Positions 31,799 through 57,600 of a stretch of DNA of 64,000 nucleotides are shown in pieces. The stretch lies in the IMG/VR virus record IMGVR_UViG_3300043425_001539, positions 62,001-126,000 of that record. One strand, given 5' to 3'. The notes beneath the pieces were generated by a model. It saw nothing but the letters and a program-made list of their open reading frames with translations, was not told where the DNA came from and ran no database searches. The first letter of the stretch is position 1. Each line of letters starts with the position of its first letter. Position numbers and translations under genes: made by a program.

Positions 31799-31807
31799 CT
31801 ATATATC
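31799..31807 (-). promoter_or_regulatory. Candidate late-promoter motif GATATATAG
   Basis: Intergenic, 24 nt upstream of the ATG at 31774. Confidence 0.6.
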
Positions 31808-39293: not shown

Positions 39294-42200
39294 TTATACA
39301 TTTGAGCGGAAAAGCGATTGAACACTTTCTTTTGTAAATGATATGTTTTCGACCACTTGTGCCACTTCAGGAACTGATTGTGCATCAACAAGAGCAATGC
39401 TGTCTTTTTTGTATGTTGAAGTCACTTGAACATCAAACGAAAATACAGGTTCATCTTGCTGGTAAATGTCAATACCTATTTTCTTAGTGTATGATAAATT
39501 TCGCAATGTTCCAACCCTTTGAGGATCATATCCTCCAAGTATTCCTAAACCGCCAGCAATTACACTTGTAACTGTTGAAGATATCCAAGGTCCAAAATAA
39601 TCAGTCATTCTGTATTGAAACACAATCGGAACAACTATTGCATTATCTGACCCAGGCTGAACGCTCTTATATGATCTTGCATCAACTCCATTAACCAACA
39701 ATTGATTAAATTGTGCAGGTCCTACAAAAAGATATGCTCCTACTGTTTGTGAACCTATTAAATATCTATCGTTATCAATAAATCCAAATTTGTTAGGCAA
39801 TTCATCAACAGATGATGGTGTGTAGGTTGATGGGAAAGGCGCTGATCCTGTTATATTAAGATTATTATCTTTGTAGCTAAGCTGTAAAGGCAAATATGAT
39901 GATAATCTTGCTGGTGCAGGTTCGTTAAAATAATTTGAATGTATAAACTCTGAAACAATCTCAGGCGCCTGCGGTAAACCAGTATTTGTGTTTAGATTAA
40001 CAGTAGGTAATTGGAGATTACTCATTGCTACTGTTGTGCCAACATTGTTAATAGCAGGATGCTGAATATGTACACAAAAATTTGTTAAATACCCATTTCC
40101 TGCTGCAGTATTTCCAGGAGTTACAGGAGAAACAACGTCCCACACCCACGGAGCGGTTGTTCCAAAAATACCCGATGCGGTTGTTCCAGGAATAGCAGTA
40201 ATTCCCGTGTCACCAAGATCGGGAATGAAACTTCTTGTTGCTGTTTGTCCATAAATAGGATTAGTTAAACCTACATCGGTATATCTACTATATAAAAATT
40301 GACCTAATAATTGTCCACTTTGATAAAATGAAGCAGATAATGTATTATCATTATTTGTATCTGTTGTATTTATACCTAAATTAACAATAGGAACATAATC
40401 ATATTTTCTATAATTATTATAATCTTGATCATTTACAGTAAATGATCCTCCTGTTGCTCCTGTTCCGCTGTAAGGAACCATTTGCCCAAATCCTCCTGGG
40501 AATCTTGATATTAATTTAAGAGGAGAAGCACTATCATTTTGCAGATATAAATAATATGTTTTAGTTAATATTGCGCCTCTTTGCTGCGCTGTTGGCAAAG
40601 AAGCAACTTGGTCTGCATAATATCCTGCAAATAAATTAACAGTAGAACCGTTTTGTACAGGTAATTTAGTATTGCTTTGATCATCAACCAAAAATATAGA
40701 TATTGGAGTAACCACTTCGTTTAAGCGATTTTCAAGATCTTGTATACGCAACTGCATTTCCTGTAACTTTTGATACAAAGATATAACGTTGCCGTCGGGT
40801 GTATAAAAATTTGAAGCAATTACATCCGCACTGTGAGCAAAATATTGTTCATTTGCTGTAAAAGAGGATGATAGGTGTTGATCCAAACCTTGTGCAGCTA
40901 AATCAGATTCAATGTCAACTTTTACCTTTTCTTGTGCCGCCTGCTGTAATGCAATTGTAGCTTCGTCTTCGGTAACCAAATCATTAGGAAATTCAAACGA
41001 TATTGTATTTGACGGCGAAGACAGAATTGGATTATTTGGCCATCCTGCCTCAGACACAGACACTACATAAAATTCAACTTTTTCTCCTTTAGATATAGGA
41101 ATATCTATTTGATTAATATTGATAACATCAGGATTAGTTATATCCTCATTTGCCCAAACGTATTTTCCTGTATTGCCATCATATATTTTTTTACGAACCG
41201 GTGATTTATACTCGTTTAAAGCTGAAAATGATGCTCTTTGTTTTGATCCATTAGGATCGGTATAATCGAATTGCTTAATATCAGTTGCACTGCCGTCAGG
41301 CCTAACATATCTATAATAAGTTATAAATTGAATTACATTCTGCGCACCTGTTTTTTGACTGATAACAGGATTTGGTATTTGAAAAAATCCACGTAATCTA
41401 TATTTAGGCGTATCTAATGCAGCTGGTGCATTTTGTGCAGCAGAATTTAGATCAGCAACAATGGACGCATATAAAGATGATTGTGAAGTTTTTTGCTTAA
41501 TTGCTCTGTCTAACTTATTTATATCAGACTTTCTTTCATTCTCATTTGCATATTTTTTGGAATTAATTTTAGATTTTAGAAAATCAATCGATTTTTCCAA
41601 TTCATTAATTGTTTGCTGAACTTGTATTTTATCAGATTGTTTTTTTCTGATTGCTTCAATTTCTGCTTGATCTAACTTATGATCATTTATTTGAACAACT
41701 TGAAAATTATTAATGTCAAGCACAGGAGCATTTGGAACTAATCCATCAAACGTAGAAATTGATCCATCTCTTGCGCTTGTTAATAAATAATTACCAAAAT
41801 CTAAAACAGAAGACTGATAAAAATCTTTGAGATTTGTGGTTCCAGTTGTTAATGAAATGTTTAAATCATTTGTAAAAAATCCAATGCCTGGTGACCAAGT
41901 TGTTGATAATAAATTTGCTTCATCGTTAATTGTTCTAAAAAATACAACAGTGTACTCATTATATCCTATCCCAACATTAATTAATTTAGGCGAAAATGTT
42001 TCTGAATAAAATTGAACATTTTCGCCAATAACTATCGGTTCGTATCCGCTTATTCTTGTCACTCTCACGTATCTTGTTGAGCTATCAATTTCAGCTATTT
42101 CATAAATAGTTTCGCCTTTAATTAATTTATCGCCGACCTTTAAAGTCATAGAATCTACAGATAATGATAAATTATCAGTATAAGTTAATTTATCAAACAG

Positions 42201-42911
42201 ATAAAATCTTTTTGTTGAAGTGGTGCCATCGGAATTAGTGTATGTTCTATCTTCATAATTAACAGGCAAAAAAGATCCTGTATAACGAACAACTGATAAC
42301 GGCAAATCATTTACGCCTTCATCTAAAAAATATGTTATACCTTGTTTTTGTAAGTCAACCAATAAGTTAACATAATTTATATTATTTTTTCCTTGGATGT
42401 TATTTTGAAAATACTCAAGTTGTGTTTGATTGCTAATGTTTAGAATCATCCTTTTCACAAACACCTTGGATTCTTCTTGCGGAATATAACGTGTTACATC
42501 AAAACTTACTTTTAACGCAGGACTCATCAGGTTTTCAAAAAACCAATTATTCTCTGAAATAAAAGTTGATGGAACAGCAACTTCTCCGATTGGAGAAGGA
42601 TTAACAGGAGTTTTTGCTTGATAGATTTTTTTATAAGTGCCATCAGGTTGTCTTATAAAAGCATCACTGCCGTCAAACCCCAACATTTTTGATATCGTGT
42701 TGTCAATCCTGTCTATGCTGGATTTAAGATATCCAAAAGAAGGTATTGAGTACGTTGATGTTGTTCCGTCATTTTCTTTGACCGAAATTTGAACTGTTTC
42801 AGAAACAGAAACAGTTGCTTGTTGCAACTGTTGCAATGTTTCTAATGAATTATTTTGCAGTCTAACAAAATCAGCAAGAACTGAGGATAAACTATTATTT
42901 GTGTCAGCCAT
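39294..42911 (-). CDS. Large virion structural protein with coiled-coil segments
   Basis: 1205 aa; heptads at IQVQQTINELEKSIDFLKSKI and LYQKLQEMQLRIQDLENRL. Confidence 0.6.
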   Translation of the reverse strand: MADTNNSLSSVLADFVRLQNNSLETLQQLQQATVSVSETVQISVKENDGTTSTYSIPSFGYLKSSIDRIDNTISKMLGFDGSDAFIRQPDGTYKKIYQAKTPVNPSPIGEVAVPSTFISENNWFFENLMSPALKVSFDVTRYIPQEESKVFVKRMILNISNQTQLEYFQNNIQGKNNINYVNLLVDLQKQGITYFLDEGVNDLPLSVVRYTGSFLPVNYEDRTYTNSDGTTSTKRFYLFDKLTYTDNLSLSVDSMTLKVGDKLIKGETIYEIAEIDSSTRYVRVTRISGYEPIVIGENVQFYSETFSPKLINVGIGYNEYTVVFFRTINDEANLLSTTWSPGIGFFTNDLNISLTTGTTNLKDFYQSSVLDFGNYLLTSARDGSISTFDGLVPNAPVLDINNFQVVQINDHKLDQAEIEAIRKKQSDKIQVQQTINELEKSIDFLKSKINSKKYANENERKSDINKLDRAIKQKTSQSSLYASIVADLNSAAQNAPAALDTPKYRLRGFFQIPNPVISQKTGAQNVIQFITYYRYVRPDGSATDIKQFDYTDPNGSKQRASFSALNEYKSPVRKKIYDGNTGKYVWANEDITNPDVININQIDIPISKGEKVEFYVVSVSEAGWPNNPILSSPSNTISFEFPNDLVTEDEATIALQQAAQEKVKVDIESDLAAQGLDQHLSSSFTANEQYFAHSADVIASNFYTPDGNVISLYQKLQEMQLRIQDLENRLNEVVTPISIFLVDDQSNTKLPVQNGSTVNLFAGYYADQVASLPTAQQRGAILTKTYYLYLQNDSASPLKLISRFPGGFGQMVPYSGTGATGGSFTVNDQDYNNYRKYDYVPIVNLGINTTDTNNDNTLSASFYQSGQLLGQFLYSRYTDVGLTNPIYGQTATRSFIPDLGDTGITAIPGTTASGIFGTTAPWVWDVVSPVTPGNTAAGNGYLTNFCVHIQHPAINNVGTTVAMSNLQLPTVNLNTNTGLPQAPEIVSEFIHSNYFNEPAPARLSSYLPLQLSYKDNNLNITGSAPFPSTYTPSSVDELPNKFGFIDNDRYLIGSQTVGAYLFVGPAQFNQLLVNGVDARSYKSVQPGSDNAIVVPIVFQYRMTDYFGPWISSTVTSVIAGGLGILGGYDPQRVGTLRNLSYTKKIGIDIYQQDEPVFSFDVQVTSTYKKDSIALVDAQSVPEVAQVVENISFTKESVQSLFRSNV

Positions 42912-45962: not shown

Positions 45963-46014
45963 AATGTATTTTTTCTGCCTTTTTTCTATATATCAAAGGC
46001 AGAAAAAATACATT
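45963..46014. repeat. Perfect 20-bp inverted repeat with a 12-nt loop
   Basis: aatgtattttttctgccttt (45963-45982) and aaaggcagaaaaaatacatt (45995-46014) are exact reverse complements. Confidence 0.95.
45986..45994 (-). promoter_or_regulatory. Candidate late-promoter motif GATATATAG in the hairpin loop
   Basis: 27 nt upstream of the ATG at 45958. Confidence 0.65.
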
Positions 46015-46019
46015 GTGTT

Positions 46020-46859
46020 TTAACTATTTTTAATATAATTGGCTGGTAAATACTTTTCCCATTGCGGATCATACCAAAATCTTCTACCTGTTTTATCAAC
46101 AATTGATGCGCCTTTATTGTAGCATAGCATCCATTCTTTGAAAGTTTTTCCTTCAGTACCGTTTGGGTTAACCCAATCTTTAAGTTCACCTCCTCCTAAT
46201 TTGTAAGCATCTCTACAGCACAAATGAATGAATTTAATTAATGAATCCACTTCCAGTTGTGTCAACTTATTTGCTGGTTGAAAAGGATTAATATTCATTC
46301 TATAAAGAATTTCAGCTCTTAAATAATTGCCAACGCCATTAAATAGTGATTGATTCATAAGAATCTCGTTAAGCGGAGTATTAAAAACTTTTTGTTTATA
46401 CCAATTATGTCTTAAGTATTCCGAAAATTCATTAAATTCTGTAAGCGGGCAATAACCTCTATTTTTCGCCCACCCGTCAACCCATTTCCATTTAGCAAAT
46501 CTTCTAACGTCGTGCAAAAATAAATAATTTCCTTCTATTGTTTTGAATCTCAAATGAGCATGCTTCATAATTTTATCAAAATGCTCTGAGTTCTTTTTAA
46601 TATAAGCAAAATTCCCACTCATACCTAAAGTAACTGATAAACTCTTTTTAGGTAAACCATCACCTAACGGTATTAAATCAATAATCATTTCCTTGCCTCG
46701 AGTTTTTGCTTGCATTTTAAACACAACATCATCAAAACTGTCTAACGGAGTTTTAACTTTTGAAACTTCTGACTTTTCAACTTTATTAAAAAATGTTTCT
46801 TTGGATGAAACATAATTAATAAAATCTCCCATGATTTTAACTTCAGCTATTTCAGGCAT
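46020..46859 (-). CDS. nei: Fpg/Nei family DNA glycosylase (NEIL1-like, no four-Cys zinc finger)
   Basis: N-terminal MPE, RGKEM, LGMSG, DVRRFAKW, H2TH LMNQSLFNGVGNYLRAEILY, C-terminal GRRFWY. Confidence 0.88.
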   Translation of the reverse strand: MPEIAEVKIMGDFINYVSSKETFFNKVEKSEVSKVKTPLDSFDDVVFKMQAKTRGKEMIIDLIPLGDGLPKKSLSVTLGMSGNFAYIKKNSEHFDKIMKHAHLRFKTIEGNYLFLHDVRRFAKWKWVDGWAKNRGYCPLTEFNEFSEYLRHNWYKQKVFNTPLNEILMNQSLFNGVGNYLRAEILYRMNINPFQPANKLTQLEVDSLIKFIHLCCRDAYKLGGGELKDWVNPNGTEGKTFKEWMLCYNKGASIVDKTGRRFWYDPQWEKYLPANYIKNS

Positions 46860-46865
46860 AATATT

Positions 46866-47549
46866 TTAAATAGATTTGTTTGAATTTTTATATACAGCCT
46901 CACACATTTTAATCATAGCCGTTACATCTTTTTCGCAATATGTAATAATACGGTCAATTTCTCCATTCCAATACGTTGTATGAACCATTGAGCCGTCAAT
47001 GTCGTCTTTGGGTGATGGAATACCCATTTCATATACTGCTTCTTCAAATGAAACATCTAAACTTGAAAATGCCTTCCACCAATCTTTCATATCAAAAATT
47101 GAAATTTCCCAAGGTTTTTTATCAAAAGTATTTAAACATTCAGGAACATTATACCCATAAGACATAAGTTTACGATAAATCCATGCAATATCAAAATTTT
47201 TAATATTCCATCCAGTAGGCGTCATACCGTTTGCGCTTGCTTTTACAAAGAGCGCGTATACCGATTTTATTAGTTCAGCTTCGTTTTCATTTGAAATAGT
47301 ATTAACTTTAATTTCACCTTCTTTCCAAACACCAAAAGATAAACATGCAATTTTTCCAAATTCAGGAAATAATGAAACTTTATCTAAGTATGCTTGGTTA
47401 ACATCACCTAAGCTAAGGCGTTCAGCTTTTTTCTTGAAAATAGCTGCGCCAACTGGGTCTTTACTTTTAAATTCTTCATAGTTGCGGTATTCTCCGCAGG
47501 TTTCAATGTCAAAAAATAAAAAGCGGGAAAATTTTTCTTTAGAAAACAT
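46866..47549 (-). CDS. Stand-alone PolB-type DEDD 3'-5' exonuclease
   Basis: FFDIET, GWNIKNFDIAW and YCEKDV Exo I-III motifs; KPWE motif. Confidence 0.85.
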   Translation of the reverse strand: MFSKEKFSRFLFFDIETCGEYRNYEEFKSKDPVGAAIFKKKAERLSLGDVNQAYLDKVSLFPEFGKIACLSFGVWKEGEIKVNTISNENEAELIKSVYALFVKASANGMTPTGWNIKNFDIAWIYRKLMSYGYNVPECLNTFDKKPWEISIFDMKDWWKAFSSLDVSFEEAVYEMGIPSPKDDIDGSMVHTTYWNGEIDRIITYCEKDVTAMIKMCEAVYKNSNKSI

Positions 47550-47624: not shown

Positions 47625-47885
47625 ATGGAAAACCAACAAAGAATGAAGATAGATATCTCAGATGCCCCTTGGGCTGAGTGCTGTGGAGAACCTCAACTGT
47701 TTGAGACAGCTTTTATGTTTAAAAGAATTTCTCCTATAGTGAGTCCTTCAGGAAAAGAGGAACATGTTCCTATAGAAATTGTTATTTGTAAAAAATGTGG
47801 TAAAGTTCCACAATTCATACTTAAAAATTATCCTGACTTACCTGATTCACTTAAAGCTAATTCATCAAAATTAATCAATGAATAA
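47625..47885 (+). CDS. Small zinc-ribbon-like protein
   Basis: ECCG and CKKCG Cys clusters; 86 aa. Confidence 0.7.
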   Translation: MENQQRMKIDISDAPWAECCGEPQLFETAFMFKRISPIVSPSGKEEHVPIEIVICKKCGKVPQFILKNYPDLPDSLKANSSKLINE

Positions 47886-48306
47886 TTCCCCGTTTATACT
47901 ATCATCTTTGTATATTGATTGGGTTAATGAAATTAATGGATGGGGCATTTTTACCAAAGAGGATATCAAAGAAAAAACTGTTGTTGAGGTGTCACCTGTC
48001 ATTGTTTACCCTGAAGAAATATTAAAAATTGCTTCTTGGCAAACACAAGGTGATAAAAATGCGTATGCATCATTAGGTTTTACTCTGTATAGCCTTAACT
48101 GGAATGAAAACTATGCCGCCATACCTTTAGGATATGGCGGCATTTATAATCATAGTGACAATAATAATTGTCAATTTATGAATGATATGGATAACGGTTT
48201 ACTTTATATCATCACATTAAAAAATATTAATGCTGGTGAGCAATTATTGGTTAATTACGGAAATGACTGGTTTGATAGCAAGCCATTTCCAAAAATTGAT
48301 TTATAG
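47878..48306 (+). CDS. SET-domain protein (putative lysine methyltransferase)
   Basis: GWGIFTKEDI, YNHS and AGEQLLVNYG...WF SET motifs. Confidence 0.88.
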   Translation: MNNSPFILSSLYIDWVNEINGWGIFTKEDIKEKTVVEVSPVIVYPEEILKIASWQTQGDKNAYASLGFTLYSLNWNENYAAIPLGYGGIYNHSDNNNCQFMNDMDNGLLYIITLKNINAGEQLLVNYGNDWFDSKPFPKIDL

Positions 48307-49020
48307 CTATGTGTTTTGTATATGATCCAAAAATTTAGTTATTAGAGGATTTCTAACGATATCTGACCGTTCAAAACGCATAGTTCCAAATTCTTCTAAA
48401 TCTGTTACCGAATTAAAAAACCAACTTAAACCACTGGATTCTTTTTTCTTTAAATCAATTTGGTCTTCATCGGCTAAAAATATCATTTTGGAATTTTCTC
48501 CTATACGTGTAACAGTACTTATTAGGTGATGTTTAGGCATATTTTGTGCCTCGTCAACTATAATTATTGCATTATCTATACTTCTTCCTCGGATGTAGGC
48601 AAGAGGCATTATTTCTATCAATTCTTGCGCCTCTAAATTTTTGGATAATTCTTTACCAATTAATTTATAAAAATTATCCATAAAGGAAATCATATAAGGA
48701 TCCATTTTTTCTTTCATAGTACCTTTAAGAAAACCTATTTCCTCTCCTTCCAATACTGTAACCGATTTTACAATGATTATTTTTTTGTAAATATCTGATT
48801 TTTTTGCTAATAATTTTAATGCTTCAGCACAAGCAACATAAGTTTTTCCTGTTCCAGCTGGTCCCGCGCAGATTACTATGTCTTTAGAATCAATTAATCT
48901 TACAAATTGTTTTTGTCTTTCATTTTTGCATTTTAAATCAAAATTAACTTTTGTCAATGCAAGCTGTGCTGGTGATAACCATTTTTCTATGTTTTCTTCC
49001 TGTACGTACTTTCTTCTCAT
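48307..49020 (-). CDS. phoH: PhoH-like ATPase
   Basis: GPAGTGKT, LAYIRGRSID, IVDEAQN, DEDQID, DIVRNPL. Confidence 0.92.
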   Translation of the reverse strand: MRRKYVQEENIEKWLSPAQLALTKVNFDLKCKNERQKQFVRLIDSKDIVICAGPAGTGKTYVACAEALKLLAKKSDIYKKIIIVKSVTVLEGEEIGFLKGTMKEKMDPYMISFMDNFYKLIGKELSKNLEAQELIEIMPLAYIRGRSIDNAIIIVDEAQNMPKHHLISTVTRIGENSKMIFLADEDQIDLKKKESSGLSWFFNSVTDLEEFGTMRFERSDIVRNPLITKFLDHIQNT

Positions 49021-49047
49021 ATATAGTTTTTTTGTGAATTGTTAAAG

Positions 49048-49602
49048 CTAAACTTTAACCGTTTTAACTGTCACCCCTTTTTCTTTTTCGACTTCTTTTG
49101 CTAATTTTAAGTTATCATCATTATCATCAAAAAATATAAAATTTTTATACCCAGTTTCAACTAAACGATGCAATGCTTCTTTTTTTCTTTCGGCGATGCT
49201 ACCTTTAAAGCCATGTTTAGGATCGTTAACAGCAATTACTAAATCCTGATGTATATCTATGCCATTATGTAAGAAAAATTCGCGTATCATTGCAGAATTT
49301 GATCTTGCAGTCACAATTGCAACGTGAGTGCCTGATTTATAAAAATTCTTTAATTCGTCAAGAATGTGTGAAATGAATGTAGATTGTTTTAAAATATCAA
49401 AATCTTCAAATTCAGAAAAAGATAACGTGTGATTTTTATTGGGTTTAAAAAAATTAAATTCAGTAGGAGATAAAGTTTTTATTATCTTATGTGTTTTTGA
49501 ATCTAGTACATGTATTTTTGCTGTTGATAAAATTAACGTCTCGTCCAAGTCGAATACGGCAAGTGTGCTGGATATTTTTCCTTTTATATTTACTTCATTC
49601 AT
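49048..49602 (-). CDS. HAD-superfamily phosphatase (phage type)
   Basis: VFDLDETL (DxD), IVTARS, K in ERKK, FFDDNDDN. Confidence 0.85.
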   Translation of the reverse strand: MNEVNIKGKISSTLAVFDLDETLILSTAKIHVLDSKTHKIIKTLSPTEFNFFKPNKNHTLSFSEFEDFDILKQSTFISHILDELKNFYKSGTHVAIVTARSNSAMIREFFLHNGIDIHQDLVIAVNDPKHGFKGSIAERKKEALHRLVETGYKNFIFFDDNDDNLKLAKEVEKEKGVTVKTVKV

Positions 49603-50210
49603 TTTTGTTTCATTAAAGTATTTTTTCGTATTTCTCTACTTCTTTTTCTTTTTTCTTCTAAAAAAAATTCTTTTGTATAAGTTTCTTTGTTTTTGTATAA
49701 TATCCAATTTTTGTGCCGATTGCGTCTTCCGTTAATAACCGCATTTATATGACATGAAAGTGAACCTATTTTATTTGCAAGATCAAACTTAGTTCCTACA
49801 TATTCTTCAAAAGTTTCTATATTAAAAAAATGATAAATTGTTTTATCATACCTTGGATTTTTTTCACCTTTTCTTGCGGTGGGATTTTCTTTTAAAAATT
49901 TTTTTAATGTTTCTGACTTTTTTTTATTTGCATATTCACCAAGATTTCCGCCCTGTCCACCGTCTACTAAATTATAACCTATATCAGGATTTGTTGAATT
50001 AAGTTCTTTTATCCAAAATTTTTCTTTGCTATTAAGCTCTTCTTTTGAAGAACAAGATTCTAAAATATCTTTTTTAAAATTTTCTGAACCATATTTTTTA
50101 ATAGCCCTGCGTAATTTGAAACCCGAACCTAAATATTTAGGATTGTTAAATTTATCTTGTCCAACATAAATTTTTCCATTAATAAGATTTGTGATTTTGT
50201 ATATGACCAT
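49599..50210 (-). mobile_element. Free-standing GIY-YIG homing endonuclease (Seg-like)
   Basis: VIYKITNLINGKIYVGQ, YLGSG, EKFWIKELNS, GYNLVDGG, then a basic DNA-binding region. Confidence 0.9.
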
Positions 50211-50222
50211 AAAAGTTTTTTA

Positions 50223-50231
50223 ATATATATC
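50223..50231 (-). promoter_or_regulatory. Candidate late-promoter motif GATATATAT
   Basis: 12 nt upstream of the endonuclease ATG. Confidence 0.5.
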
Positions 50232-50266
50232 ATTAAAAAAAACTTATTAATGTATCATCTAAGATA

Positions 50267-50311
50267 TTAGATTGTGTTGGATATTTTACCTTTAATTTTT
50301 GCTTCGTTCAT
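50267..50311 (-). pseudogene. Orphaned 14-codon duplicate of the HAD gene 5' end
   Basis: MNEAKIKGKISNTI* versus HAD MNEVNIKGKISSTL: 10/14 aa and 34/42 nt identical by hand count. Confidence 0.85.
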
Positions 50312-50312
50312 A

Positions 50313-51665
50313 TTATTCTATTTTGATATATGTTTCAGGTGTCCATTCAGAATAAATTTTATCATTAAGATTAAAAATGCTACATACCGACCAAAAATAT
50401 TCTCCATCAGATAATGTACCCGAAGGTATAACATATATATCTTCATTTGAATACATTTTAATTTCCGTGTATGCTATTTTTCTGTAATTATTGCCACCTG
50501 ACAAAACATTAACGCCTGAGTGAACAATAATATTTTTATCTATAATAGAATCTGCAAATGAAGAAGAAAATGTAAAATCTGCGCCGTTAAATTGCGCTAA
50601 TGTTATTTCCCAATTTCTATTTCCTAAATCAGTTTTTGATTTAATAAAAAGATCCTTTGATATATTTTCAACATAAGAGGAAATTTCAGGCACAAATGTA
50701 TGATTTTTAGCCTGTATTCTTAAAATTCCTGATGTATAATCAGCATAATAAATTCGATACAAATCTTTTTGCAATGATCCATCATTTCCAAGCAAGCAAG
50801 ATACGTTTGCGCCTGTTCCAGTGCCTACAACATTTACAAGTGGATTAACTGAATAGCTGCTCCCTGCATTTTCAATTTTTACCGTGGTAATTTTTCTTTC
50901 ATATGCGCCTGTGGTACCTATAAAAGGTTTTAAAAGAATATCATTATTTCCATTTGCTCTTGTCCCAGTTACGTCAAAATAATTAATATTACCGCCGTCA
51001 GAAACATTTTTTTCTCTAACTCTTAAATTATACTTAAATACATTATTTGTAGGATCTTCCCATCTAAAATATATTCCATCGTTTCTTATGGTTGATAATA
51101 AATTAATAGGATACTCTTTAATTTTTTCATTTGTTATGTCTGTATAAATTTTTCTTTTCCAAACAAAATTATCATTTATTTCCATTAATAAAGGATCCCC
51201 GTCATTAATATTACATAATAAATTATATTCATATGTATATATGTCGGCAAAAGGACCGCTGACTGCCACATCCAATATATCTATGACGGCACCTTTTATA
51301 TAGCTATGATTATCATTTATTGAAGTTACAGTAAAAAAATCTCCTTTTTTAATTAAATTTGACCCATACAATCCTGGAGTGTTTGCGGTGGGCGCTTCTT
51401 TTACTGTGTATTCAACTACAATTTCATATACAAAACCTACATTAGTTTGAGTTCTTCTTGAATTAAATGAAAGAATCGGAGAAGAATATTCAGTATCATA
51501 ATAATCATTATCTATACTTTCAGAAGTATAGATATACCCTTGATTTAATGCATTAGAAGGCGTATTACCATCTTCTATTGGAGGTACCGATATAAATCTG
51601 TTCAAATCATTTGTTGATAAAAAAACAGATTTTTCTTTAATTTGTCTGCGATCCAAAGTTTTCAT
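50313..51665 (-). CDS. Virion structural protein
   Basis: 450 aa, beta-rich; the ENAGSSYSVNPLVNVVGTGTGA motif is shared with the adjacent baseplate protein. Confidence 0.55.
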   Translation of the reverse strand: MKTLDRRQIKEKSVFLSTNDLNRFISVPPIEDGNTPSNALNQGYIYTSESIDNDYYDTEYSSPILSFNSRRTQTNVGFVYEIVVEYTVKEAPTANTPGLYGSNLIKKGDFFTVTSINDNHSYIKGAVIDILDVAVSGPFADIYTYEYNLLCNINDGDPLLMEINDNFVWKRKIYTDITNEKIKEYPINLLSTIRNDGIYFRWEDPTNNVFKYNLRVREKNVSDGGNINYFDVTGTRANGNNDILLKPFIGTTGAYERKITTVKIENAGSSYSVNPLVNVVGTGTGANVSCLLGNDGSLQKDLYRIYYADYTSGILRIQAKNHTFVPEISSYVENISKDLFIKSKTDLGNRNWEITLAQFNGADFTFSSSFADSIIDKNIIVHSGVNVLSGGNNYRKIAYTEIKMYSNEDIYVIPSGTLSDGEYFWSVCSIFNLNDKIYSEWTPETYIKIE

Positions 51666-54600
51666 CTATTTCAATAAAAGTATTCTTTTTAATTGTTGCA
51701 GAATTTCCGTTTGTGTCCTCTATTAAAAGTTCAACTCCAAATATTCCTGGGTAAGTAAATGTCCACATTATTTTCGAATCAGATGTTTCTACTAAAGTTT
51801 CTTCATTTTCTTTAATCTTCCATAAATATTTAGATTTACCTGATATTTTAGAAGTATCTGATGTAAATAATATAGAAACACCTATTGGAAATTTTCCATT
51901 TTTATTGTTGGCCCAAGTTTCCTCCCATGTTAATGCTCCGCCGATTGATCTTTCATAAGGTAATCTTTGTGAATCAGATTCAGCCAGGCTAGAATTACTA
52001 AAATAAGGCGATGATATGTATGAATATGTAGAAGGTAAATCACTTGCTGGGTACCAACCTTTATATCCAAAAGGACTTAATCCTTCAAATAAATATGTTT
52101 GAATGTTTCTGTAATTTATAACAAAATCATTTAACCCAGTCAAAAAACTTCCTACTTTATTTTCACCAAATCCCAGCCAAGAATAATAATTGCCAACAGG
52201 AAACGAGTGGGATAGCGAAGAAATATTACCATCGGGTGCTTCAAATGTTAACCCACCTTCACCTGTAAGATACCCTAAACAGTCTACGCTTGGTGTTTTT
52301 GCCTGCGCAATTATTTTAAAGTTGGCAGCAATATCACCGGATAAAACCTGTGTTGAAATAACTCCAGTATTCCATTCAGCATAAAAGGATAAAGAATTTC
52401 CACTTCCGGTGAAAGGAGAAGATAAAGTTATTTCACGAATAACACCTTGCTGTACAAAAATATTTGTAACTGTTGCAGGCGCTGTTGGGTACAATGGCAA
52501 GTAGTCTGATGTCAGAATATCACCAGGAGCTATCTGATTTTCTAATAGACCTGCAACATTTTTAATTTTATAGTCACCTACTATACAGTCACCTATAAAA
52601 GTAGCTTTCTTTTTGATATCTTTATCTAATGTTACAGTAGTTCCTGTAATTCCCAATACGGTTGAAACTTTTTCAAAAGGTTCGCCATATATTACATCTC
52701 CCACATTAATAGCTGAAGAAGTAAAAAATGAATTGGGATCAGAATAAGTGTTAATGTTTATAAAGATTGGAGATACATATTGTTCTGATATTGGATAATA
52801 ATAAAATTTGTTTAATCCTTGAGATGTTAAGTTATTTAATTCATAAAGAGCTTGAGCATAAATTTGCGCCGTACTCATTCCTCCTACAATTCCAGTAAAA
52901 TTATAAGTATCGTCTTCATTAAAAGTTAATCCACTATTTTGTACCAAATCATTAATGATAAAATTACACCAATATGAATTTGAAAAGTCTAATGTATTCC
53001 AAGATAATGCACAAGATTCTTGCCAAATTACATCTTTGTAATTTTGCCATGTAATAATATTAGAACCTAATTTTCTTTCAGCGCTATCTTCATCAAAATT
53101 TCTTTGACACACCTGAAATGAAGAAGAAATTTTAAGTAAATCATTTTCTTGATCAGATACAGATAAAATTGTGCCTACACCATTTTTCCAATTACCTATT
53201 TGTGTAACTTGCAAAGAAAAATCTCCGTACAAAATTCCGTTATCAAAGTACCAATTTGTATGATTAGCTATTGCGGTAGAATCAAATTCAGATGAAGGCG
53301 CATTATTAAAATCTCCTGACGAAGGATACATATTAAAATCAAAATAAATATTTGCAGCACCTCCTACATTTTCTCCATAGTAAATTCTTGTAGGAAATTC
53401 TTGATATTCGTATTCTAAATAAACATTTTCAATTCCTTCTGCTGCTAAATTAATTAAATAAGAATTTAATTCATCAATAGGTCCACCGTTTATTCCTGCA
53501 ATATCTATTACATATATTTCAGATTCAGACCAAATATCATAAATGGATCCAACATTACTTGTGTCCAAGTAAACGTGCGTTGTTCTAAAATCTTGCGTGT
53601 ATTTTAGTTCATTATCTAAATATGCATACAGTTTAATTTGCGTAAATCCTGGCCGTATTTCATCAAGAGGATTACATGTGACGGCGGATTTTTTAATATA
53701 AATTTTACCTAAATGATCACGCTTTTCAGGGATATTTGAATTTACTGATTCAATTACCCAAGCAGAAGATGAAATTATAGGATTCCAATTCAAATCACCA
53801 TTCAAAGGTTCACCGTCTCTAACTTTATAGATTTTTCCAATTTCTCCTTTTTTAAGTAAAGATAAATCATTGCCTTCTCCATTAAGTATTATATTTGAAG
53901 GTTGTCCGCTATACGTATTTTTTCCATTAATAGGTATACGTTTTCTTATTGGCGAATTGTTTCTTTGTACCGCTTTTATAAACTTTCCTACACTTATGCC
54001 TGATGGATTAGTATCTTCATTGTAAATTTTATTTCCGTTTAAGGTAATAGTTCCACCTATTTCACGCAAAACTTCCCATGTTGCAGGAGAAGCCTTAAAA
54101 GCTTCAGGCGGTTCAGAAAAAAGCTCAATATATGTATATTCAGGATTTGAATAATCCGAACCTAATACATTAAGTTGATACACAGTTTCATCTCTTCTTA
54201 TAAATATCCATTCGTCATCAGGATTATATAACGGGTCTATCGGCGGATAAAGTCTTTGCCCTTGAACAATAATTGTAGGATTAACCGCTGGCGGATTTGT
54301 GGTAGAATCTTGATACCCAATAACAGGTCCTTCTAAATTATCTTCAGGCGATATTTCAACAATCGGAAATTCTTCACAATAAGGAAAGCTATAATTATTA
54401 ATATCAGAAATATCTGAAATATCAAGATTATCCCATCTAAAATCAAAAGATTCCCAAATAGAATTATTAAATATGGGATTTATCCATCTACCGGTAGAAT
54501 TATCCCAATTAAAATCTATGTATCTATTATTTTCAATTTCTTGCTGCGTTTGATTTTGCTGTGTATTAGGTAATTGCTTTAATGAATCCCATGTATTAAC

Positions 54601-57600
54601 ACAGCCATTTAAAAATTTTGCAATATAAGAAAAATCAGACTCTGCCATATAAACTTCTATGCAGTTCTTTTTTATTAAATTTGCAAAATTATTATCTGTA
54701 TTATAAACAATTAATTCAACCGTGTATTTTCCAACATAAGGAAGAACGACTGTGTGATCTATAAGTAAATCTATGGGTTGAACTCCGCTATCATAATTAA
54801 ATTGATTTGTTGGTTTTTCAGGTTCTGATAAAACCACTTTCCATTGCATTTGATAAAATTCGCCTCTTCCTAAATCATTCCATGTAAATATTGATCTAGT
54901 GTGTCCACTATTCACATTAACTTCTGGCGTGGATATGTATCCTGTACCTGCATTAGTAACTTCCACTCCTTGATGGACAAAGATTTTATCACCAGATTGA
55001 ACAGTTGTTGATGCTGGCGTTAAATCATAATTTTCTACCGTAATGGTTGATGTTCCAAGACCTACTGTTACATTTGATGTTAGTACAATATTTGATATAT
55101 TGTCTCCTGTAACAAGTCTGTTAGAAGTAACATTAAATGACCCTGCGGGCGCAATTTCAGGGCTAACGTTAAAAACATTATTTGTGCCACCTCCTGTTGA
55201 ACCAACAGAAACAACAGTATATTCAAGTAAATTAAGTTGTCCTTTTCTTAAAGAAGCTGATAATGTAGCATTTGCGCCTTCTTGACTTACAACCTTTAAT
55301 GTTGGTGTAAATTTATATTCGGTGCCTGGATTAATAATTTCAGCGGCTATAACTTCACCTGTTCCGTTTGGAAGAGGATCTACGTGAACAATAACATTGG
55401 CATTTGTACTTCCTCCTAATTCATACCAAGTATATGGAACTTCATCCCAAGTAATCGGAAATTCAGTTGACAAAGAAGCAACAGCTCCTACAGGTATATT
55501 AGGTGCATCATTCCACGCGGGAGTTCTAGTTCCGTTATTAATATTTCCTACTGGGGTGCCGTCATAAATTTTTAAATTTAATTCTGTAACCGTACCTAAA
55601 TTAGGTGTAAAATTTGCAACTGGGTATGTTGAGTACCCTAATCCTTTATTTAAAAACCAAACATCTTCAACTTCAAATCCTAAATCTGACGGTGCTGCAG
55701 TAAATCCTGATCTATTTACAACTTCATATTGTGTTCCAACAGGAGAAACTACCAAAGATTGGCCAAAAGCTTGAGGAAACGAAGAATATCCTGAACCTTG
55801 TAAAGACCCTTCTTGAATTATTACATCAGTTACCACACCCAATCCTGTAACACCTGATACTATCAATCTTAACGGAGATTCATATGTTCCGCCATTAAGA
55901 GTTATTATATCCCCCACAATAAAATCTGTACCAGCAGGATTTGCTAATGAATATGATCCAGTATACCCTTTCATTTTAACATATCCTGTTGCTTGTTGAT
56001 TTGAAGTTCCTGGAAATGTTACATTAGGTATACTTGTATATGGGCCGCCTGGCGAAGTTATTGAAATATCTAAAATATCATACCTATTCATAAAAGACTG
56101 TAAAGTCTTTTCTAAAGTAGGACTTAAATATGCATCTGATGTATATGGACGTAAATCCTGAATAATTGCTCTGTCTTCACATGTAAAATTAATAGGGCGC
56201 GTTAATTCTAAAACTCTTCGTTCATCAACATTTCGCCAAGAATTAATTGCATATCTTTCATAATAAACGCCTTCACCTGTTATATCAGTTATTTGACTGT
56301 TAAGAGGCAGAAATTTTTCTTTAAGATATTTTTTAAGAGCAAAGAATTTAATTAAGGCTTCCTCATTTGTAAATTCAAATGCATCAGTTGTTATAGGTAT
56401 GCCATTTTCATCAAAATTCCCTGAATCTTTAACCAAATCATAAAAAAGCCCAAACATACTGGTTTTTTTATAGTGCTTGCTTGGAACTAAATTTAATGAT
56501 TCTCCACTTTGTTTTTTGTCTTTTAACTGAAAAGCAATAGGTACTTGTCTATACGTTCCAAATTCGGTATCTAAGCTATTTACATTTAAAAAGTATTCTT
56601 TAAGTCTGATATCATAATAACCAAACCAATTTATAATATTAACCAATCCTTTATATGATCCAACGTAAGGCCAGATTTGATCTCCTTGTAGGAGCATTTC
56701 ACGTCTTTTTTGGTTTAATAAAATATAGTCAACATTAGATTCATCTACATCTGAATCTCTAAGTATTAATTCCTGTTCAAGATCAACATCTCTACCTATA
56801 TTTGATAATAATATTCCTAGTCTTTCATCTTCAGCTTCAGTTTCAGCTCTATAAACTCCGTACATTAATAATCCAGGATTTGATGCAAATGTTATATCAA
56901 GAATCCTAAAAATCGTTATAAATACTCCTTCTACATTTGACTGATGTCCTATGTTTATCGTTAAAGGAGTTTTTTGAATATTTTCATAAACTGTTCTTTG
57001 ATATAACTGATTATTTGCAGGTCCTCCAATTGGCGACGACGGTATGGTGTCGGATGATGCAGCTTGTGTAAATTCAAATTCCAATGAAGCCGATTTGGTA
57101 ATTGTAGGATAATCTTCATTGTAATTTACATCAAATAAAAAGAAAGAATCATCGCCTTCTACATAAGCTTTAAATTTAGGAACTACTTGATATGTTATTC
57201 CCGCACCCGGTGTAGTGCCAACGGTTAAAGACGTATCAAAATATAAGTTAAAAGTATCAACTTTAGTTAAAACATACGGCCCTCCATCAAGAGCACCTCC
57301 GTCTATAAATATTTTTGATCCAGCCTGTAAATCATGTGGAAAATATGCAGTAAAATTTATTTCTCCTAAAGATGTACCGGGTATTGGATTAGTTAAAGTA
57401 ATTGATTGTGAACTTGTGTTAATATCAAAAATAAAAGTGTTTTCAGGTATGCCTGTACCACTAATATTCATTCCTACAACAAGATTTGCAATTGTAGCTG
57501 CTGGTATTCTTGCAACAACATTTGCATCATACTCTCTAACAAGTCCCGTAAAGGTAAATGATTCAATTTCAATTTTAGCACTACTGCCGTTTGCTGAAAA

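What the first reader, a model, noticed from the sequence alone, without database searches (positions are those of the whole stretch)
49561..50311. Homing endonuclease captured mid-gene with a rebuilt host-gene start: fossil of the insertion event
Seen: an orphan MNEAKIKGKISNTI* (50311-50267) precedes the GIY-YIG gene, and the HAD gene after it restarts with MNEVNIKGKISSTL (34/42 nt identical), its ATG overlapping the endonuclease stop. There is no room for a group I intron core. Inference: the endonuclease inserted near codon 14 of the HAD gene and the cassette carries a diverged replacement 5' end, restoring the gene without splicing. The uninterrupted allele should be the cleavage target.
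Basis: partly seen in the sequence, partly recalled or inferred. Interest (0 to 1): 0.7.

Follow-up and report, generated by a model that had tools for sequence, protein, structure and literature searches.

The report
Homing endonuclease carrying replacement gene start
A selfish endonuclease gene in an uncultivated freshwater phage sits inside the start of a phosphatase gene and keeps that gene working by carrying its own copy of the first 69 bases, and public metagenomes show the identical element in two different phage lineages.

Summary

**Layout (minus strand).** A 450-aa gene is followed by a dead HAD 5' remnant (50311-50244). Then come a short spacer, a free-standing Seg-like GIY-YIG endonuclease (HEG, 50210-49599) and a complete HAD phosphatase gene (49602-49048) whose ATG overlaps the HEG stop.

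**Relatives.** Twenty HEG-less relatives have the two flanking genes adjacent and no duplicate.

**The empty site.** One HEG-less contig (L019) is 99.7% identical upstream.
- Its HAD start matches the remnant.
- It differs from the window's HAD at 21 of the first 69 nt, but at only 2 of the next 1034.

**The imported start.** The working 5' end is the type of another lineage (L017).
- Wastewater runs hold a contig with the identical HEG plus that 5' end, joined to an L017-type gene body.
- The tract that moved is about 750 bp. Crossovers lie at remnant nt 24-30 and HAD nt 69-81.

**Refinements.**
- The junction is at about codon 24, in catalytic motif I, not codon 14.
- The remnant is itself a mosaic.
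- A second lineage repeats the pattern with the same right boundary.

**Limits.** Cleavage, its exact site and immunity through motif I changes (DLDET, DLDDC) are inferred. No intron signal was found. No usable RNA data exist.

The nearest described analogues are fungal mitochondrial endonuclease ORFs that carry replacement gene ends.

The parts
50313..51665 (-). Upstream 450-aa gene of unknown function. It is the conserved left neighbour of HAD and the left homology arm for homing.
   Evidence: ORF, with no Pfam or PHROG family. Homologues end immediately before HAD in 11 IMG/VR loci and in L017-L019. It is 99.67% identical to L019 over 1506 nt.
50285..50311 (-). Remnant part 1: the recipient's own HAD nt 1-27, still at the native position 2 nt after the upstream stop. 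The left crossover lies between nt 24 and nt 30 (50288-50282).
   Evidence: It carries the L019-type base at all five sites that tell the two types apart (nt 6, 11, 15, 18, 24).
50244..50284 (-). Remnant part 2, brought in with the cassette. It holds donor-type HAD nt 28-41, then an odd 9 nt (50272-50264) that contain the TAA stop at 50269-50267, then a relic of codons ~19-24 (LDDTLI) in another frame.
   Evidence: It has donor-type bases at nt 30, 33, 36, 38 and 39. A 264-nt contig from wastewater run X5 is identical to window 50024-50287. The frame-2 translation reads LDDTLIS.
50238..50263 (-). 26-nt conserved core, CTTAGATGATACATTAATAAGTTTTT. It is a relic of the target site at the cassette's left edge. 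It overlaps the end of the remnant and the start of the spacer.
   Evidence: 25 of 26 positions are invariant in three cassette lineages whose endonuclease genes are only 72-75% identical in DNA. It occurs once in the window.
50211..50243 (-). Spacer with a promoter-like GATATATA motif (50231-50224), 14 nt before the endonuclease ATG.
   Evidence: The motif occurs 11 times in the window, always on the minus strand. Eight copies lie 5-40 nt upstream of ORF starts (binomial P 8e-10). The hairpin fold here is not better than shuffles (z -0.76).
49599..50210 (-). Free-standing Seg-like GIY-YIG homing endonuclease gene (203 aa).
   Evidence: Pfam GIY-YIG and SegE_GIY-YIG. PHROG 'homing endonuclease'. 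I-TevI catalytic domain by sequence (E 6e-7) and by fold (TM 0.73 by target). It is the only GIY-YIG gene in the 238-kb record. It is absent from 20 related loci.
49534..49602 (-). Imported working 5' end of HAD (nt 1-69), including the altered motif I (DLDET). Its ATG overlaps the endonuclease stop. The right crossover lies between nt 69 and nt 81 (49534-49522).
   Evidence: It has 21 differences from L019 within nt 6-69, against 2 in the next 1034 nt. It has only 4 differences from L017 in nt 1-80 (Fisher P 5e-25). It is identical in the wastewater contig that has an L017-type gene body.
49048..49533 (-). Native remainder of the HAD-superfamily phosphatase gene (recipient type).
   Evidence: Only 1 substitution and 1 homopolymer indel separate it from L019. 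Pfam HAD families match below their cut-offs. PHROG 415 'polynucleotide kinase', E 8e-13. 206 homologues were found.
48307..49020 (-). PhoH-like gene, the conserved right neighbour and part of the right homology arm.
   Evidence: Pfam PhoH, E 2e-61. It is syntenic in all related loci.

Best explanation
This is a mobile cassette of about 750 bp. It consists of a free-standing Seg-like GIY-YIG homing endonuclease gene with its own promoter-like motif, a degenerate relic of the target on its left, and a working replacement copy of the first ~69 nt of a HAD phosphatase gene on its right.

**Shown**
- The window's lineage was, very recently, an endonuclease-less genome like L019.
- It acquired a tract running from remnant nt 24-30 to HAD nt 69-81.
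- That tract came from a phage of another lineage (L017-like) in which the identical cassette is found.
- The recipient's own first ~27 nt stayed behind as a dead 14-codon ORF.
- HAD is now read from the cassette-borne start, which overlaps the endonuclease stop, so no splicing is needed.
- A second lineage (L020) shows the same mosaic with the same right boundary. A third (L024) has the same layout and the same left-edge relic.

**Inferred**
- The enzyme cuts endonuclease-less alleles near HAD nt ~66-80, in or just after the codons for catalytic motif I (DLDDTLI).
- The break is repaired from a co-infecting cassette-bearing genome. The upstream gene and remnant pair on the left, and the HAD body pairs on the right.
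- Cassette-bearing alleles escape cutting through changes at HAD nt 63-66 (DLDDT to DLDET or DLDDC).
- The arrangement first arose when an endonuclease gene sitting directly upstream of HAD, as in the distant locus L026, entered a genome with a different upstream gene. That entry would have been a one-sided, illegitimate repair event that left the recipient's 5' end stranded.
For: **Anatomy**
- Searches give the layout. One search finds no intron.
- The endonuclease has an I-TevI-like catalytic domain, and the catalytic Tyr, Tyr, Glu and Asn positions are invariant in 20 homologues.

**The empty site**
- Twenty endonuclease-less loci have the flanking genes adjacent and no duplicate.

**Sister genome L019**
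- It is 99.67% identical over 1506 nt upstream.
- HAD nt 70-1103 differ at only 2 positions, while nt 6-69 differ at 21 (Fisher P 5e-25).
- The remnant matches L019 at all 5 informative sites in nt 1-24.

**Foreign origin of the working start**
- It has 4 differences from L017 in nt 1-80, against 163 in nt 81-1103.

**The same cassette in the donor background**
- A 944-nt contig from run X4 has no difference from the window over 49523-50240.
- From nt 81 onward it carries 35 of 35 L017-type differences.
- Fragments in runs X5 and X6 of the same study agree. One of them is identical through remnant nt 25-68.

**Co-occurrence**
- Run X3 holds both the endonuclease-less contig and a contig identical to the endonuclease.

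**Replication in other lineages**
- L020 against its nearest endonuclease-less relative L008: 33% divergence in nt 1-69 against 7% afterwards. The last difference of the dense cluster is at nt 69.
- The L020 remnant matches L008 at 39 of 42 positions.
- L024 has its own-type remnant, the same 26-nt core, the endonuclease and HAD.

**Motif I**
- All three cassette lineages have DLDET or DLDDC.
- 107 of 118 homologues with a readable motif have DLDDT.
- In the L017 background, alleles with and without the cassette differ within nt 1-273 only at nt 45, 51, 60, 63 and 100.
Against: **No activity data**
- Endonuclease activity, the cleavage site and immunity are all untested.

**Motif variants are not specific to the cassette**
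- DLDDC and DLDET are not confined to cassette-bearing alleles. Five alleles with them, on six contigs, lack the endonuclease.
- The variants could therefore simply be native to the cassette's home lineages.
- Two of the four window-specific changes (nt 51 and 60) fall within ordinary synonymous variation among endonuclease-less alleles.

**Gaps in the donor evidence**
- The donor's full left flank was not recovered.
- The wastewater evidence comes from short contigs of one study.
- Co-occurrence in run X3 does not prove that both alleles belong to one phage population.

**Unexplained features**
- The 9 nt at 50272-50264 have no explanation.
- Nothing explains why both the remnant and the working copy are of the same type in the donor lineage.
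Confidence: 0.8

Rival explanations
1. The cassette moves, but not through its own endonuclease. The enzyme would be inactive or domesticated, and the mosaic would come from ordinary homologous recombination between co-infecting phages.
For: - No cleavage data exist.
- Large phages recombine freely.
- Motif I variants also occur in alleles without the endonuclease.
Against: - The catalytic residues are intact and invariant among 20 homologues.
- The gene is 100% identical in two backgrounds whose flanks differ by 16-25%.
- The imported tract ends at the same point (nt 69) in two independent lineages, right next to the relic of the target.
- The tract is very short on both sides, as expected from repair of a local break.
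Confidence: 0.1
2. Loss rather than gain. L019 would descend from a cassette-bearing ancestor by deletion, making the window's state the older one.
For: - Direct repeats flanking the endonuclease could mediate deletion.
- Endonuclease-less alleles with cassette-like motifs exist.
Against: - Deletion between the two copies would leave a chimera of remnant and working copy. L019 nt 28-69 match neither.
- The remnant at the native position is L019-type, so L019-type is the lineage's own start.
- The working start is L017-type, and it is found with the endonuclease in an L017-type gene.
Confidence: 0.05
3. A local tandem duplication was made at insertion, and the two copies then diverged in place. 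No foreign 5' end would have been imported.
For: The two copies are collinear and 81% identical over 42 nt.
Against: - The two copies carry the diagnostic bases of two different extant lineages.
- About 30% divergence is packed into 69 nt of a genome otherwise 99.7-99.8% identical to L019.
- The working copy is identical in another background.
Confidence: 0.03
4. The endonuclease lies in an intron, an intein or a translational bypass element, and HAD is expressed from the upstream ATG through RNA or protein processing.
For: - Many GIY-YIG endonucleases are encoded in introns.
- Database names for homologues say 'group I intron endonuclease'.
Against: - No Rfam family matches in 48000-52000.
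- Only 33 nt and 0 nt flank the ORF.
- The remnant is frameshifted and stopped.
- HAD has a complete N-terminus of normal length with its own ATG.
Confidence: 0.02
5. The arrangement is an assembly chimera of two strains.
For: Both alleles occur in one sample, run X3, and that can confuse assemblers.
Against: - The same arrangement appears with no differences in two IMG/VR contigs and in 93-kb and 57-kb contigs of two runs.
- Two other lineages have the same layout on several independent contigs.
Confidence: 0.01

Closest known systems
Free-standing Seg/Mob-type GIY-YIG homing endonucleases of T4-like phages ('intronless homing', marker exclusion)
   Same: - The ORF is free-standing and has an I-TevI-like GIY-YIG catalytic domain. 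Its best matches in cultured phages are annotated as Seg-like.
- Presence varies between close relatives, and flanking sequence is co-converted. The T4 review describes both features (PMC2988022).
   Different: - The Seg and Mob genes described there lie between genes, or split a gene into two working pieces (nrdA in Aeh1, gene 39/60 in T4; PMC2988022).
- Here the element sits inside the 5' end of a gene and carries a replacement start, leaving a dead remnant.
- Identity to any cultured-phage endonuclease is at most about 43%.
Mobile endonuclease ORFs (mORFs) of fungal mitochondria that carry a replacement gene end (Allomyces macrogynus atp6; Glomus atp6, atp9, cox2, nad3)
   Same: - An endonuclease ORF is inserted in a protein gene together with a foreign copy of the displaced gene end.
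- The native end is left beside it and matches the closest element-free relative.
- The result is a hybrid gene (PMC3630166).
   Different: - Those elements replace the 3' (C-terminal) end and are often fused in frame to the host gene. Most encode LAGLIDADG enzymes, and they live in mitochondria.
- Here the 5' end is replaced and the ORF is separate, with only a 4-nt overlap. The enzyme is GIY-YIG and the host is a bacteriophage.
[quoted passage not shown]
   Same: A mobile element carries a duplicated N-terminal part of the host gene, and this leads to partial replacement of the gene by foreign sequence (PMC7315562).
   Different: Those are described as introns in a fungal mitochondrion. Here no intron is detectable and the gene is restored by a new start codon alone.
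I-TevI operator and homing-site duality
   Same: A sequence resembling the homing site lies next to the endonuclease's own promoter-like element. In T4 such a site serves as an operator that is bound but not cut (PMC2988022).
   Different: This is only an analogy. Binding of this enzyme to the 26-nt core has not been tested, and the promoter assignment rests on a recurring motif.

Membership tests
GIY-YIG homing endonucleases (I-TevI / Seg type) | GIY-YIG catalytic domain, by sequence and by fold | tested here: met
   Pfam PF01541 at 30.8 bits (cut-off 22.6) and SegE_GIY-YIG at 26.4 bits (cut-off 25). PDB 1LN0 and 1MK0, the I-TevI catalytic domain, match at E 6e-7. An AlphaFold model (mean pLDDT 89.8) matches 1MK0 with TM 0.73 by target and E 8e-5.
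GIY-YIG homing endonucleases (I-TevI / Seg type) | Catalytic residues present (Tyr of GIY, Tyr of YIG, Arg, Glu, Asn) | tested here: met
   The alignment to I-TevI places Y4, Y15, R35, E63 and N80 at I-TevI positions Y6, Y17, R27, E75 and N90. Y4, Y15, E63 and N80 are invariant in 20 homologues. R35 is the majority residue but is not in the invariant list.
GIY-YIG homing endonucleases (I-TevI / Seg type) | Separate C-terminal DNA-binding domain joined by a linker | tested here: inconclusive
   The model shows a long helix (residues 91-108), a confident alpha/beta module (126-171) and a terminal helix. No solved DNA-binding domain matches significantly. The best is I-HmuI at E 0.41.
GIY-YIG homing endonucleases (I-TevI / Seg type) | Site-specific double-strand cleavage of the allele that lacks the element | not testable with these tools
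   This needs an enzyme assay. Only indirect support exists, from the conversion tract boundaries.
Homing element (any class) | Present or absent at one site among close relatives, with co-conversion of flanking markers | tested here: met
   L019 is the empty site at 99.7% flank identity. The imported tract is sharply bounded. The identical element is found in a second background.
Group I intron-encoded endonuclease | ORF embedded in a self-splicing intron core that interrupts the host reading frame | tested here: not met
   An Rfam scan of 48000-52000 at E up to 1 finds no intron family. Only 33 nt precede the ORF and none follow it. The host reading frame is complete downstream.
Fungal mitochondrial mORF elements with a replacement gene end | Endonuclease ORF plus a foreign copy of the displaced gene end, with the native end left as a remnant that matches element-free relatives | tested here: met
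   Here the end concerned is the 5' end, whereas the described cases concern the 3' end (PMC3630166).
Fungal mitochondrial mORF elements with a replacement gene end | ORF fused in frame with the host gene, in a mitochondrial setting | tested here: not met
   The ORF is separate and in a different frame from HAD, sharing only ATGA. The genome is a 238-kb virus record.
HAD-superfamily phosphatase (the host gene) | Motif I DxDx(T/V), plus the Thr/Ser, Lys and acidic motifs in order | tested here: inconclusive
   The sequence shows DLDET at residues 18-22, IVTARS, and FFDDNDDN. Seven Pfam HAD families match, but all below their cut-offs (best E 1.7e-4). PHROG 415 'polynucleotide kinase' matches at E 8e-13. 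No solved relative is found by sequence.

The most novel reading that the evidence does not exclude
The cassette may act as a two-edged selfish element that reshapes a catalytic motif and spreads immunity faster than it spreads itself.

**Immunity without the endonuclease**
- The cassette carries an intact, cut-resistant copy of the whole target, continuous with the rest of HAD.
- A broken recipient can therefore be repaired from that copy on both sides of the break without copying the endonuclease.
- This would seed endonuclease-less but resistant alleles (DLDDC, DLDET) across lineages.
- Five such alleles were found. Some have cassette-like 5' ends.

**The relic as a control element**
- The 26-nt relic of the sensitive target is nearly invariant.
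- It lies 10-11 nt upstream of the endonuclease's promoter-like motif.
- It may have been kept as an operator that the enzyme binds but cannot cut, as with I-TevI.
Probability: 0.3. Interest if true: 0.75.

Novelty: new variant of a known kind. Interest (0 to 1): 0.6.

Why it matters
**A third way for a free-standing endonuclease to sit in a phage gene**
- Free-standing homing endonucleases in phages are described either between genes or as insertions that split a gene into two working pieces.
- This locus shows another solution in a phage. The element lands inside a conserved catalytic motif and brings the displaced gene start with it.
- The described counterparts are in fungal mitochondria, where the 3' end is replaced.

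**An unusually complete natural record**
- The empty site, the filled site, the donor background and both crossover intervals can all be read from public metagenomes. The crossover intervals are 7 and 13 nt wide.
- This gives a ready set of substrates for testing target choice, immunity and conversion tract length of an uncultivated phage's endonuclease.

**Practical consequences**
- Annotators should know that a short orphan ORF upstream of a phage endonuclease can be the stranded start of the next gene.
- The first codons of a phage gene can have a different ancestry from the rest of it.
- If the motif I variants prove to be resistance alleles, this would be a case of a selfish nuclease driving change at an enzyme's active site.

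Tried and rejected
- **DNA search of cultured phages:** blastn of the locus against 50,697 phage records gave nothing relevant. A protein search with HAD found one uncultured phage at 32%. No cultured relative exists to name the group.
- **Scanning for more cassettes with the core:** the 20-mer in IMG/VR found only the window's near-identical contig. The 19-mer in JGI metagenomes gave 67 hits, none next to a related endonuclease or HAD, so these are chance or unrelated matches.
- **Prediction that non-consensus motif I marks cassette-bearing alleles:** rejected as a strict rule. All five non-consensus alleles checked, on six contigs, lack the endonuclease.
- **Hairpin or terminator between remnant and endonuclease:** the fold is no better than shuffles (z -0.76). 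The sigma-70-type promoter scan is at chance level (9 sites found, 10 expected).
- **RNA evidence:** the only metatranscriptome with any signal has one 262-nt contig, outside the junctions.
- **Recovering the donor's left flank:** the wastewater contigs stop at or within the remnant. Loci from contig look-ups cannot be used as references for laying reads.
- **Phage precedent in the literature:** four full-text searches found none. Absence from this library is not proof of absence.
- **Predicting the enzyme-DNA complex:** considered and not run, because such models do not reliably discriminate sequence specificity.
Full report
**1. What is in the sequence**

All genes of the region lie on the minus strand.
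- A 450-aa gene of unknown function (51665-50313) ends with TAA.
- Two bases later an ATG opens a 14-codon ORF, MNEAKIKGKISNTI-stop (50311-50267).
- After a short AT-rich stretch comes a 203-aa GIY-YIG gene (50210-49599).
- Its stop shares the tetranucleotide ATGA with the start of a 184-aa HAD-superfamily gene (49602-49048), which begins MNEVNIKGKISSTL.
- A PhoH-like gene follows (49020-48307).

Supporting results:
- Pfam confirms GIY-YIG, SegE-type GIY-YIG and PhoH. The HAD families match only below their cut-offs.
- PHROGs call the two central genes 'homing endonuclease' and 'polynucleotide kinase', the latter presumably through its phosphatase part.
- The two 5' copies align over 42 columns with a score of 49. 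In 2000 shuffles the mean was 21.9, sd 3.5 and the maximum 39.
- Rfam finds no intron or any other family here.

The window is part of a 238,475-bp IMG/VR virus record, estimated 84% complete. Its G+C content is 32%. There are no cultured relatives.

**2.

Beyond its stop codon, and in another frame, the remnant continues with a stretch that translates as LDDTLI.
- In the HAD family this is the catalytic motif I region. It reads FDLDDTLI in nearly all homologues.
- The remnant therefore spans about codons 1-24 (50311 to about 50244) with an internal frameshifting loss.
- The structural junction is at about nt 70 of HAD, inside the most conserved part of the gene, not at codon 14.

**3. Relatives without the endonuclease**

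Searches with the HAD protein gave:
- twelve IMG/VR loci;
- several contigs from public assemblies.

In 20 loci that lack the endonuclease, the upstream gene is directly followed by HAD. In the older arrangement it overlaps HAD. None of them has a second copy of the HAD 5' end.

**4. The empty site of the window's own lineage**

Contig L019 (2573 nt) is 99.67% identical to the window over 1506 nt of the upstream gene.
- Its HAD gene starts with exactly the bases of the window's remnant.
- Downstream it differs from the window's HAD at 21 positions within nt 6-69, then at only 2 positions in the next 1034 nt. One of those two is a homopolymer indel.
- This concentration of differences gives Fisher P 5e-25.

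The window and L019 are thus the same phage lineage except for one sharply bounded foreign tract.

L019 cannot be a deletion derivative of the window type. Its nt 28-69 match neither the remnant nor the working copy.

**5. Where the foreign tract comes from**

Contigs L017 and L018 also lack the endonuclease. They belong to another lineage, 75% identical in the upstream gene and 84% downstream.
- Their HAD nt 1-80 differ from the window's working copy at only four positions (nt 45, 51, 60, 63).
- In nt 81-1103 they differ at 163 positions.

Laying public runs on the window then showed the following.
- In wastewater run X4, a 944-nt contig has no difference from the window from 50240 down to 49523. 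That stretch is the spacer, the endonuclease and HAD nt 1-80.
- From HAD nt 81 onward the same contig carries 35 of 35 L017-type differences, plus one private change.
- Runs X5 and X6 of the same study hold consistent fragments.
  - One is identical to window 50024-50287, so remnant nt 25-68 travel with the cassette.
  - Another covers the whole remnant with 5 differences. Five is also the number of sites at which the two lineage types differ in nt 1-24. Which sites differ was not listed.

The same cassette, at 100% identity, therefore sits in two phage backgrounds that differ by 16-25% around it.
- In the window's lineage the left crossover lies between remnant nt 24 and 30 (50288-50282).
- The right crossover lies between HAD nt 69 and 81 (49534-49522).
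- The tract is about 750 bp, in agreement with the 749-nt skip of the endonuclease-less contig.

Freshwater run X3 holds both the endonuclease-less contig and a 646-nt contig identical to the endonuclease. This shows co-occurrence in one sample. It does not prove that both belong to one population.

**6. The pattern repeats in other lineages**

Two further lineages carry a related endonuclease at the same place: L020-L023 at 72% protein identity and L024-L025 at 65%. Each has, in order:
- a remnant of its own lineage's type;
- the same 26-nt core (CTTAGATGATACATTAATAA, then G or A, then TTTTT);
- a promoter-like motif;
- the endonuclease;
- a complete HAD gene whose start overlaps the endonuclease's end.

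For L020 the nearest endonuclease-less relative is L008.
- HAD nt 1-69 differ at 23 positions (33%), and nt 70-555 at 35 positions (7%).
- The last difference of the dense cluster is again at nt 69.
- The L020 remnant matches L008 at 39 of 42 positions.

A more distant endonuclease (56% identity, L026) lies directly upstream of a distant HAD homologue in an unrelated gene neighbourhood, with no evident remnant. This is a plausible picture of the ancestral, intergenic state.

**7. How it most likely works**

*Shown*
- The element is gained as a unit together with a replacement gene start.
- The recipient's own start is stranded and decays.
- HAD needs no splicing.

*Inferred from established knowledge of homing* (double-strand break, resection, and repair from the element-bearing genome with co-conversion; PMC2988022)
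- The enzyme cuts endonuclease-less alleles.
- The break is repaired using the upstream gene and remnant as the left arm and the HAD body as the right arm.

*Inferred: the break lies at about nt 66-80.* Three observations point there.
- The ancestral relic ends at about nt 72.
- Two independent conversion tracts end at nt 69, within 12 nt and 33 nt of resolution respectively.

*Immunity*
- The working copy restores a continuous target, so cassette-bearing genomes must be resistant.
- All three cassette lineages have a changed motif I: DLDET in the window, DLDDC in L020 and L024.
- 107 of 118 homologues with a readable motif have DLDDT.
- In the L017 background, alleles with and without the cassette differ in nt 1-273 only at nt 45, 51, 60, 63 and 100.
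- This fits resistance changes around nt 63-66 but does not prove them.
  - Five alleles with DLDDC or DLDET, on six contigs, lack the endonuclease.
  - The changes at nt 51 and 60 fall within ordinary synonymous variation.

*Origin*
- The T4 literature describes one-sided, illegitimate repair at microhomologies as a route to new sites.
- An endonuclease gene sitting next to HAD and entering a genome with a different upstream gene would give exactly this architecture.

**8. The enzyme**

- The N-terminal 85 residues align to the I-TevI catalytic domain (E 6e-7).
- An AlphaFold model (mean pLDDT 89.8) matches it structurally (TM 0.73 by target).
- The positions equivalent to I-TevI Y6, Y17, E75 and N90 are invariant in 20 homologues.
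- The C-terminal half folds confidently but matches no solved DNA-binding domain.
- It is the only GIY-YIG gene in the 238-kb record.
- Its nearest cultured-phage matches are Seg-like genes at 32-43% identity.

**9. Expression signals**

- GATATATA lies 14 nt before the endonuclease ATG.
- The motif occurs 11 times in the window, always on the coding strand. Eight copies lie 5-40 nt before ORF starts (P 8e-10).
- Related motifs precede the endonuclease in L020, L024 and L026.
- The 26-nt core sits 10-11 nt upstream of the motif. It is 25 of 26 invariant, although the endonuclease genes are only 72-75% identical in DNA.
- The reason for this conservation is unknown.
- An operator role like that of the I-TevI operator is an attractive but untested idea.

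**10. Comparison with what is known**

- The enzyme is a member of the Seg-type free-standing GIY-YIG homing endonucleases, by domain and by behaviour.
- The architecture differs from the phage cases reviewed, which are intergenic or gene-splitting.
- Functionally it mirrors the fungal mitochondrial mobile ORFs that bring a foreign C-terminal gene end and strand the native one: Allomyces atp6, and Glomus atp6, atp9, cox2 and nad3 (PMC3630166).
- It also resembles the Tremella introns with N-terminal duplications (PMC7315562).
- It is not a member of those groups. The ORF is not fused to the host gene, there is no intron, and the host is a phage.
- I found no phage description of this arrangement in four full-text searches. 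This does not exclude one.

**11. Verdict**

It is a new variant of a known kind. Its particular value is that the empty site, the filled site, the donor background and both crossover intervals are all visible in public data. What remains unproven is enzyme activity, the exact cut site, the basis of immunity and the role of the conserved core.

Noticed in passing
window 3282-63931, minus strand (for example 50224-50231, 45987-45994, 31800-31807): GATATATA occurs 11 times, always on the coding strand. Eight copies lie 5-40 nt upstream of ORF starts. It is probably this phage's promoter motif, reminiscent of the T4 late promoter TATAAATA.
   Followed up: partly
window 50238-50263: The 26-nt relic of the target site is 25 of 26 invariant across three cassette lineages whose endonuclease genes are 72-75% identical in DNA. 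The constraint on it is unexplained.
   Followed up: partly
window 50264-50272: Nine bases (ATCTAATAT) lie between the donor-type part of the remnant and the core. They resemble codons 10-13 of the L019-type start. They may be a layer left by an earlier homing round.
   Followed up: no
L095:3001-3579, L097:1081-1665, L098:1233-1826, L099:562-1131, L100:1039-1602: These HAD alleles lack the endonuclease but carry DLDDC or DLDET instead of DLDDT. They could be resistant alleles, products of endonuclease loss, or the cassette's home lineages.
   Followed up: partly
L099:562-600: The HAD N-terminus MKGYRV... resembles, in DNA, the 3' end of the L020 and L024 endonuclease genes (...KKGYYDK and ...NGYYSK). 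It may be a scar of endonuclease loss, but the similarity is weak.
   Followed up: no
L003-L013 around 5971-6001; window 50311: In most relatives HAD starts about 10 codons further upstream and overlaps the end of the upstream gene (194-aa proteins). The window's lineage and L017-L019 use a newer ATG just after the upstream stop (184 aa).
   Followed up: partly
L019:1472-1912 (corresponds to window ~49180): The endonuclease-less sister contig has a 1-nt deletion in an A-run that truncates HAD to 146 aa. This is either a low-coverage assembly error or a sign that HAD is dispensable.
   Followed up: no
window 47878-48306 (+): A SET-domain protein gene (Pfam E 4e-14) lies on the opposite strand. 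It is conserved at this position in all related phage loci.
   Followed up: partly
window 46020-46859 and 46866-47549 (-): An Fpg/Nei-family DNA glycosylase and a PolB-exonuclease-like 3'-5' exonuclease lie next to each other, and they are syntenic in relatives.
   Followed up: partly
window 51637-58101, 31808-39280, 26054-31774, 39294-42911 (-): Four very large ORFs (2154, 2490, 1906 and 1205 aa). The two smaller ORFs tested from the window's other genes (714 and 579 aa) also had no PHROG match. The C-terminus of the 2154-aa protein is the direct upstream neighbour of HAD in some relatives (L099, L100).
   Followed up: no
L026:4001-5624: A 56%-identical endonuclease lies directly upstream of a 294-aa HAD homologue with an extra C-terminal region, next to a NUDIX gene. 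A NUDIX-HAD fusion (P0118, 321 aa) also appears among the homologues.
   Followed up: no
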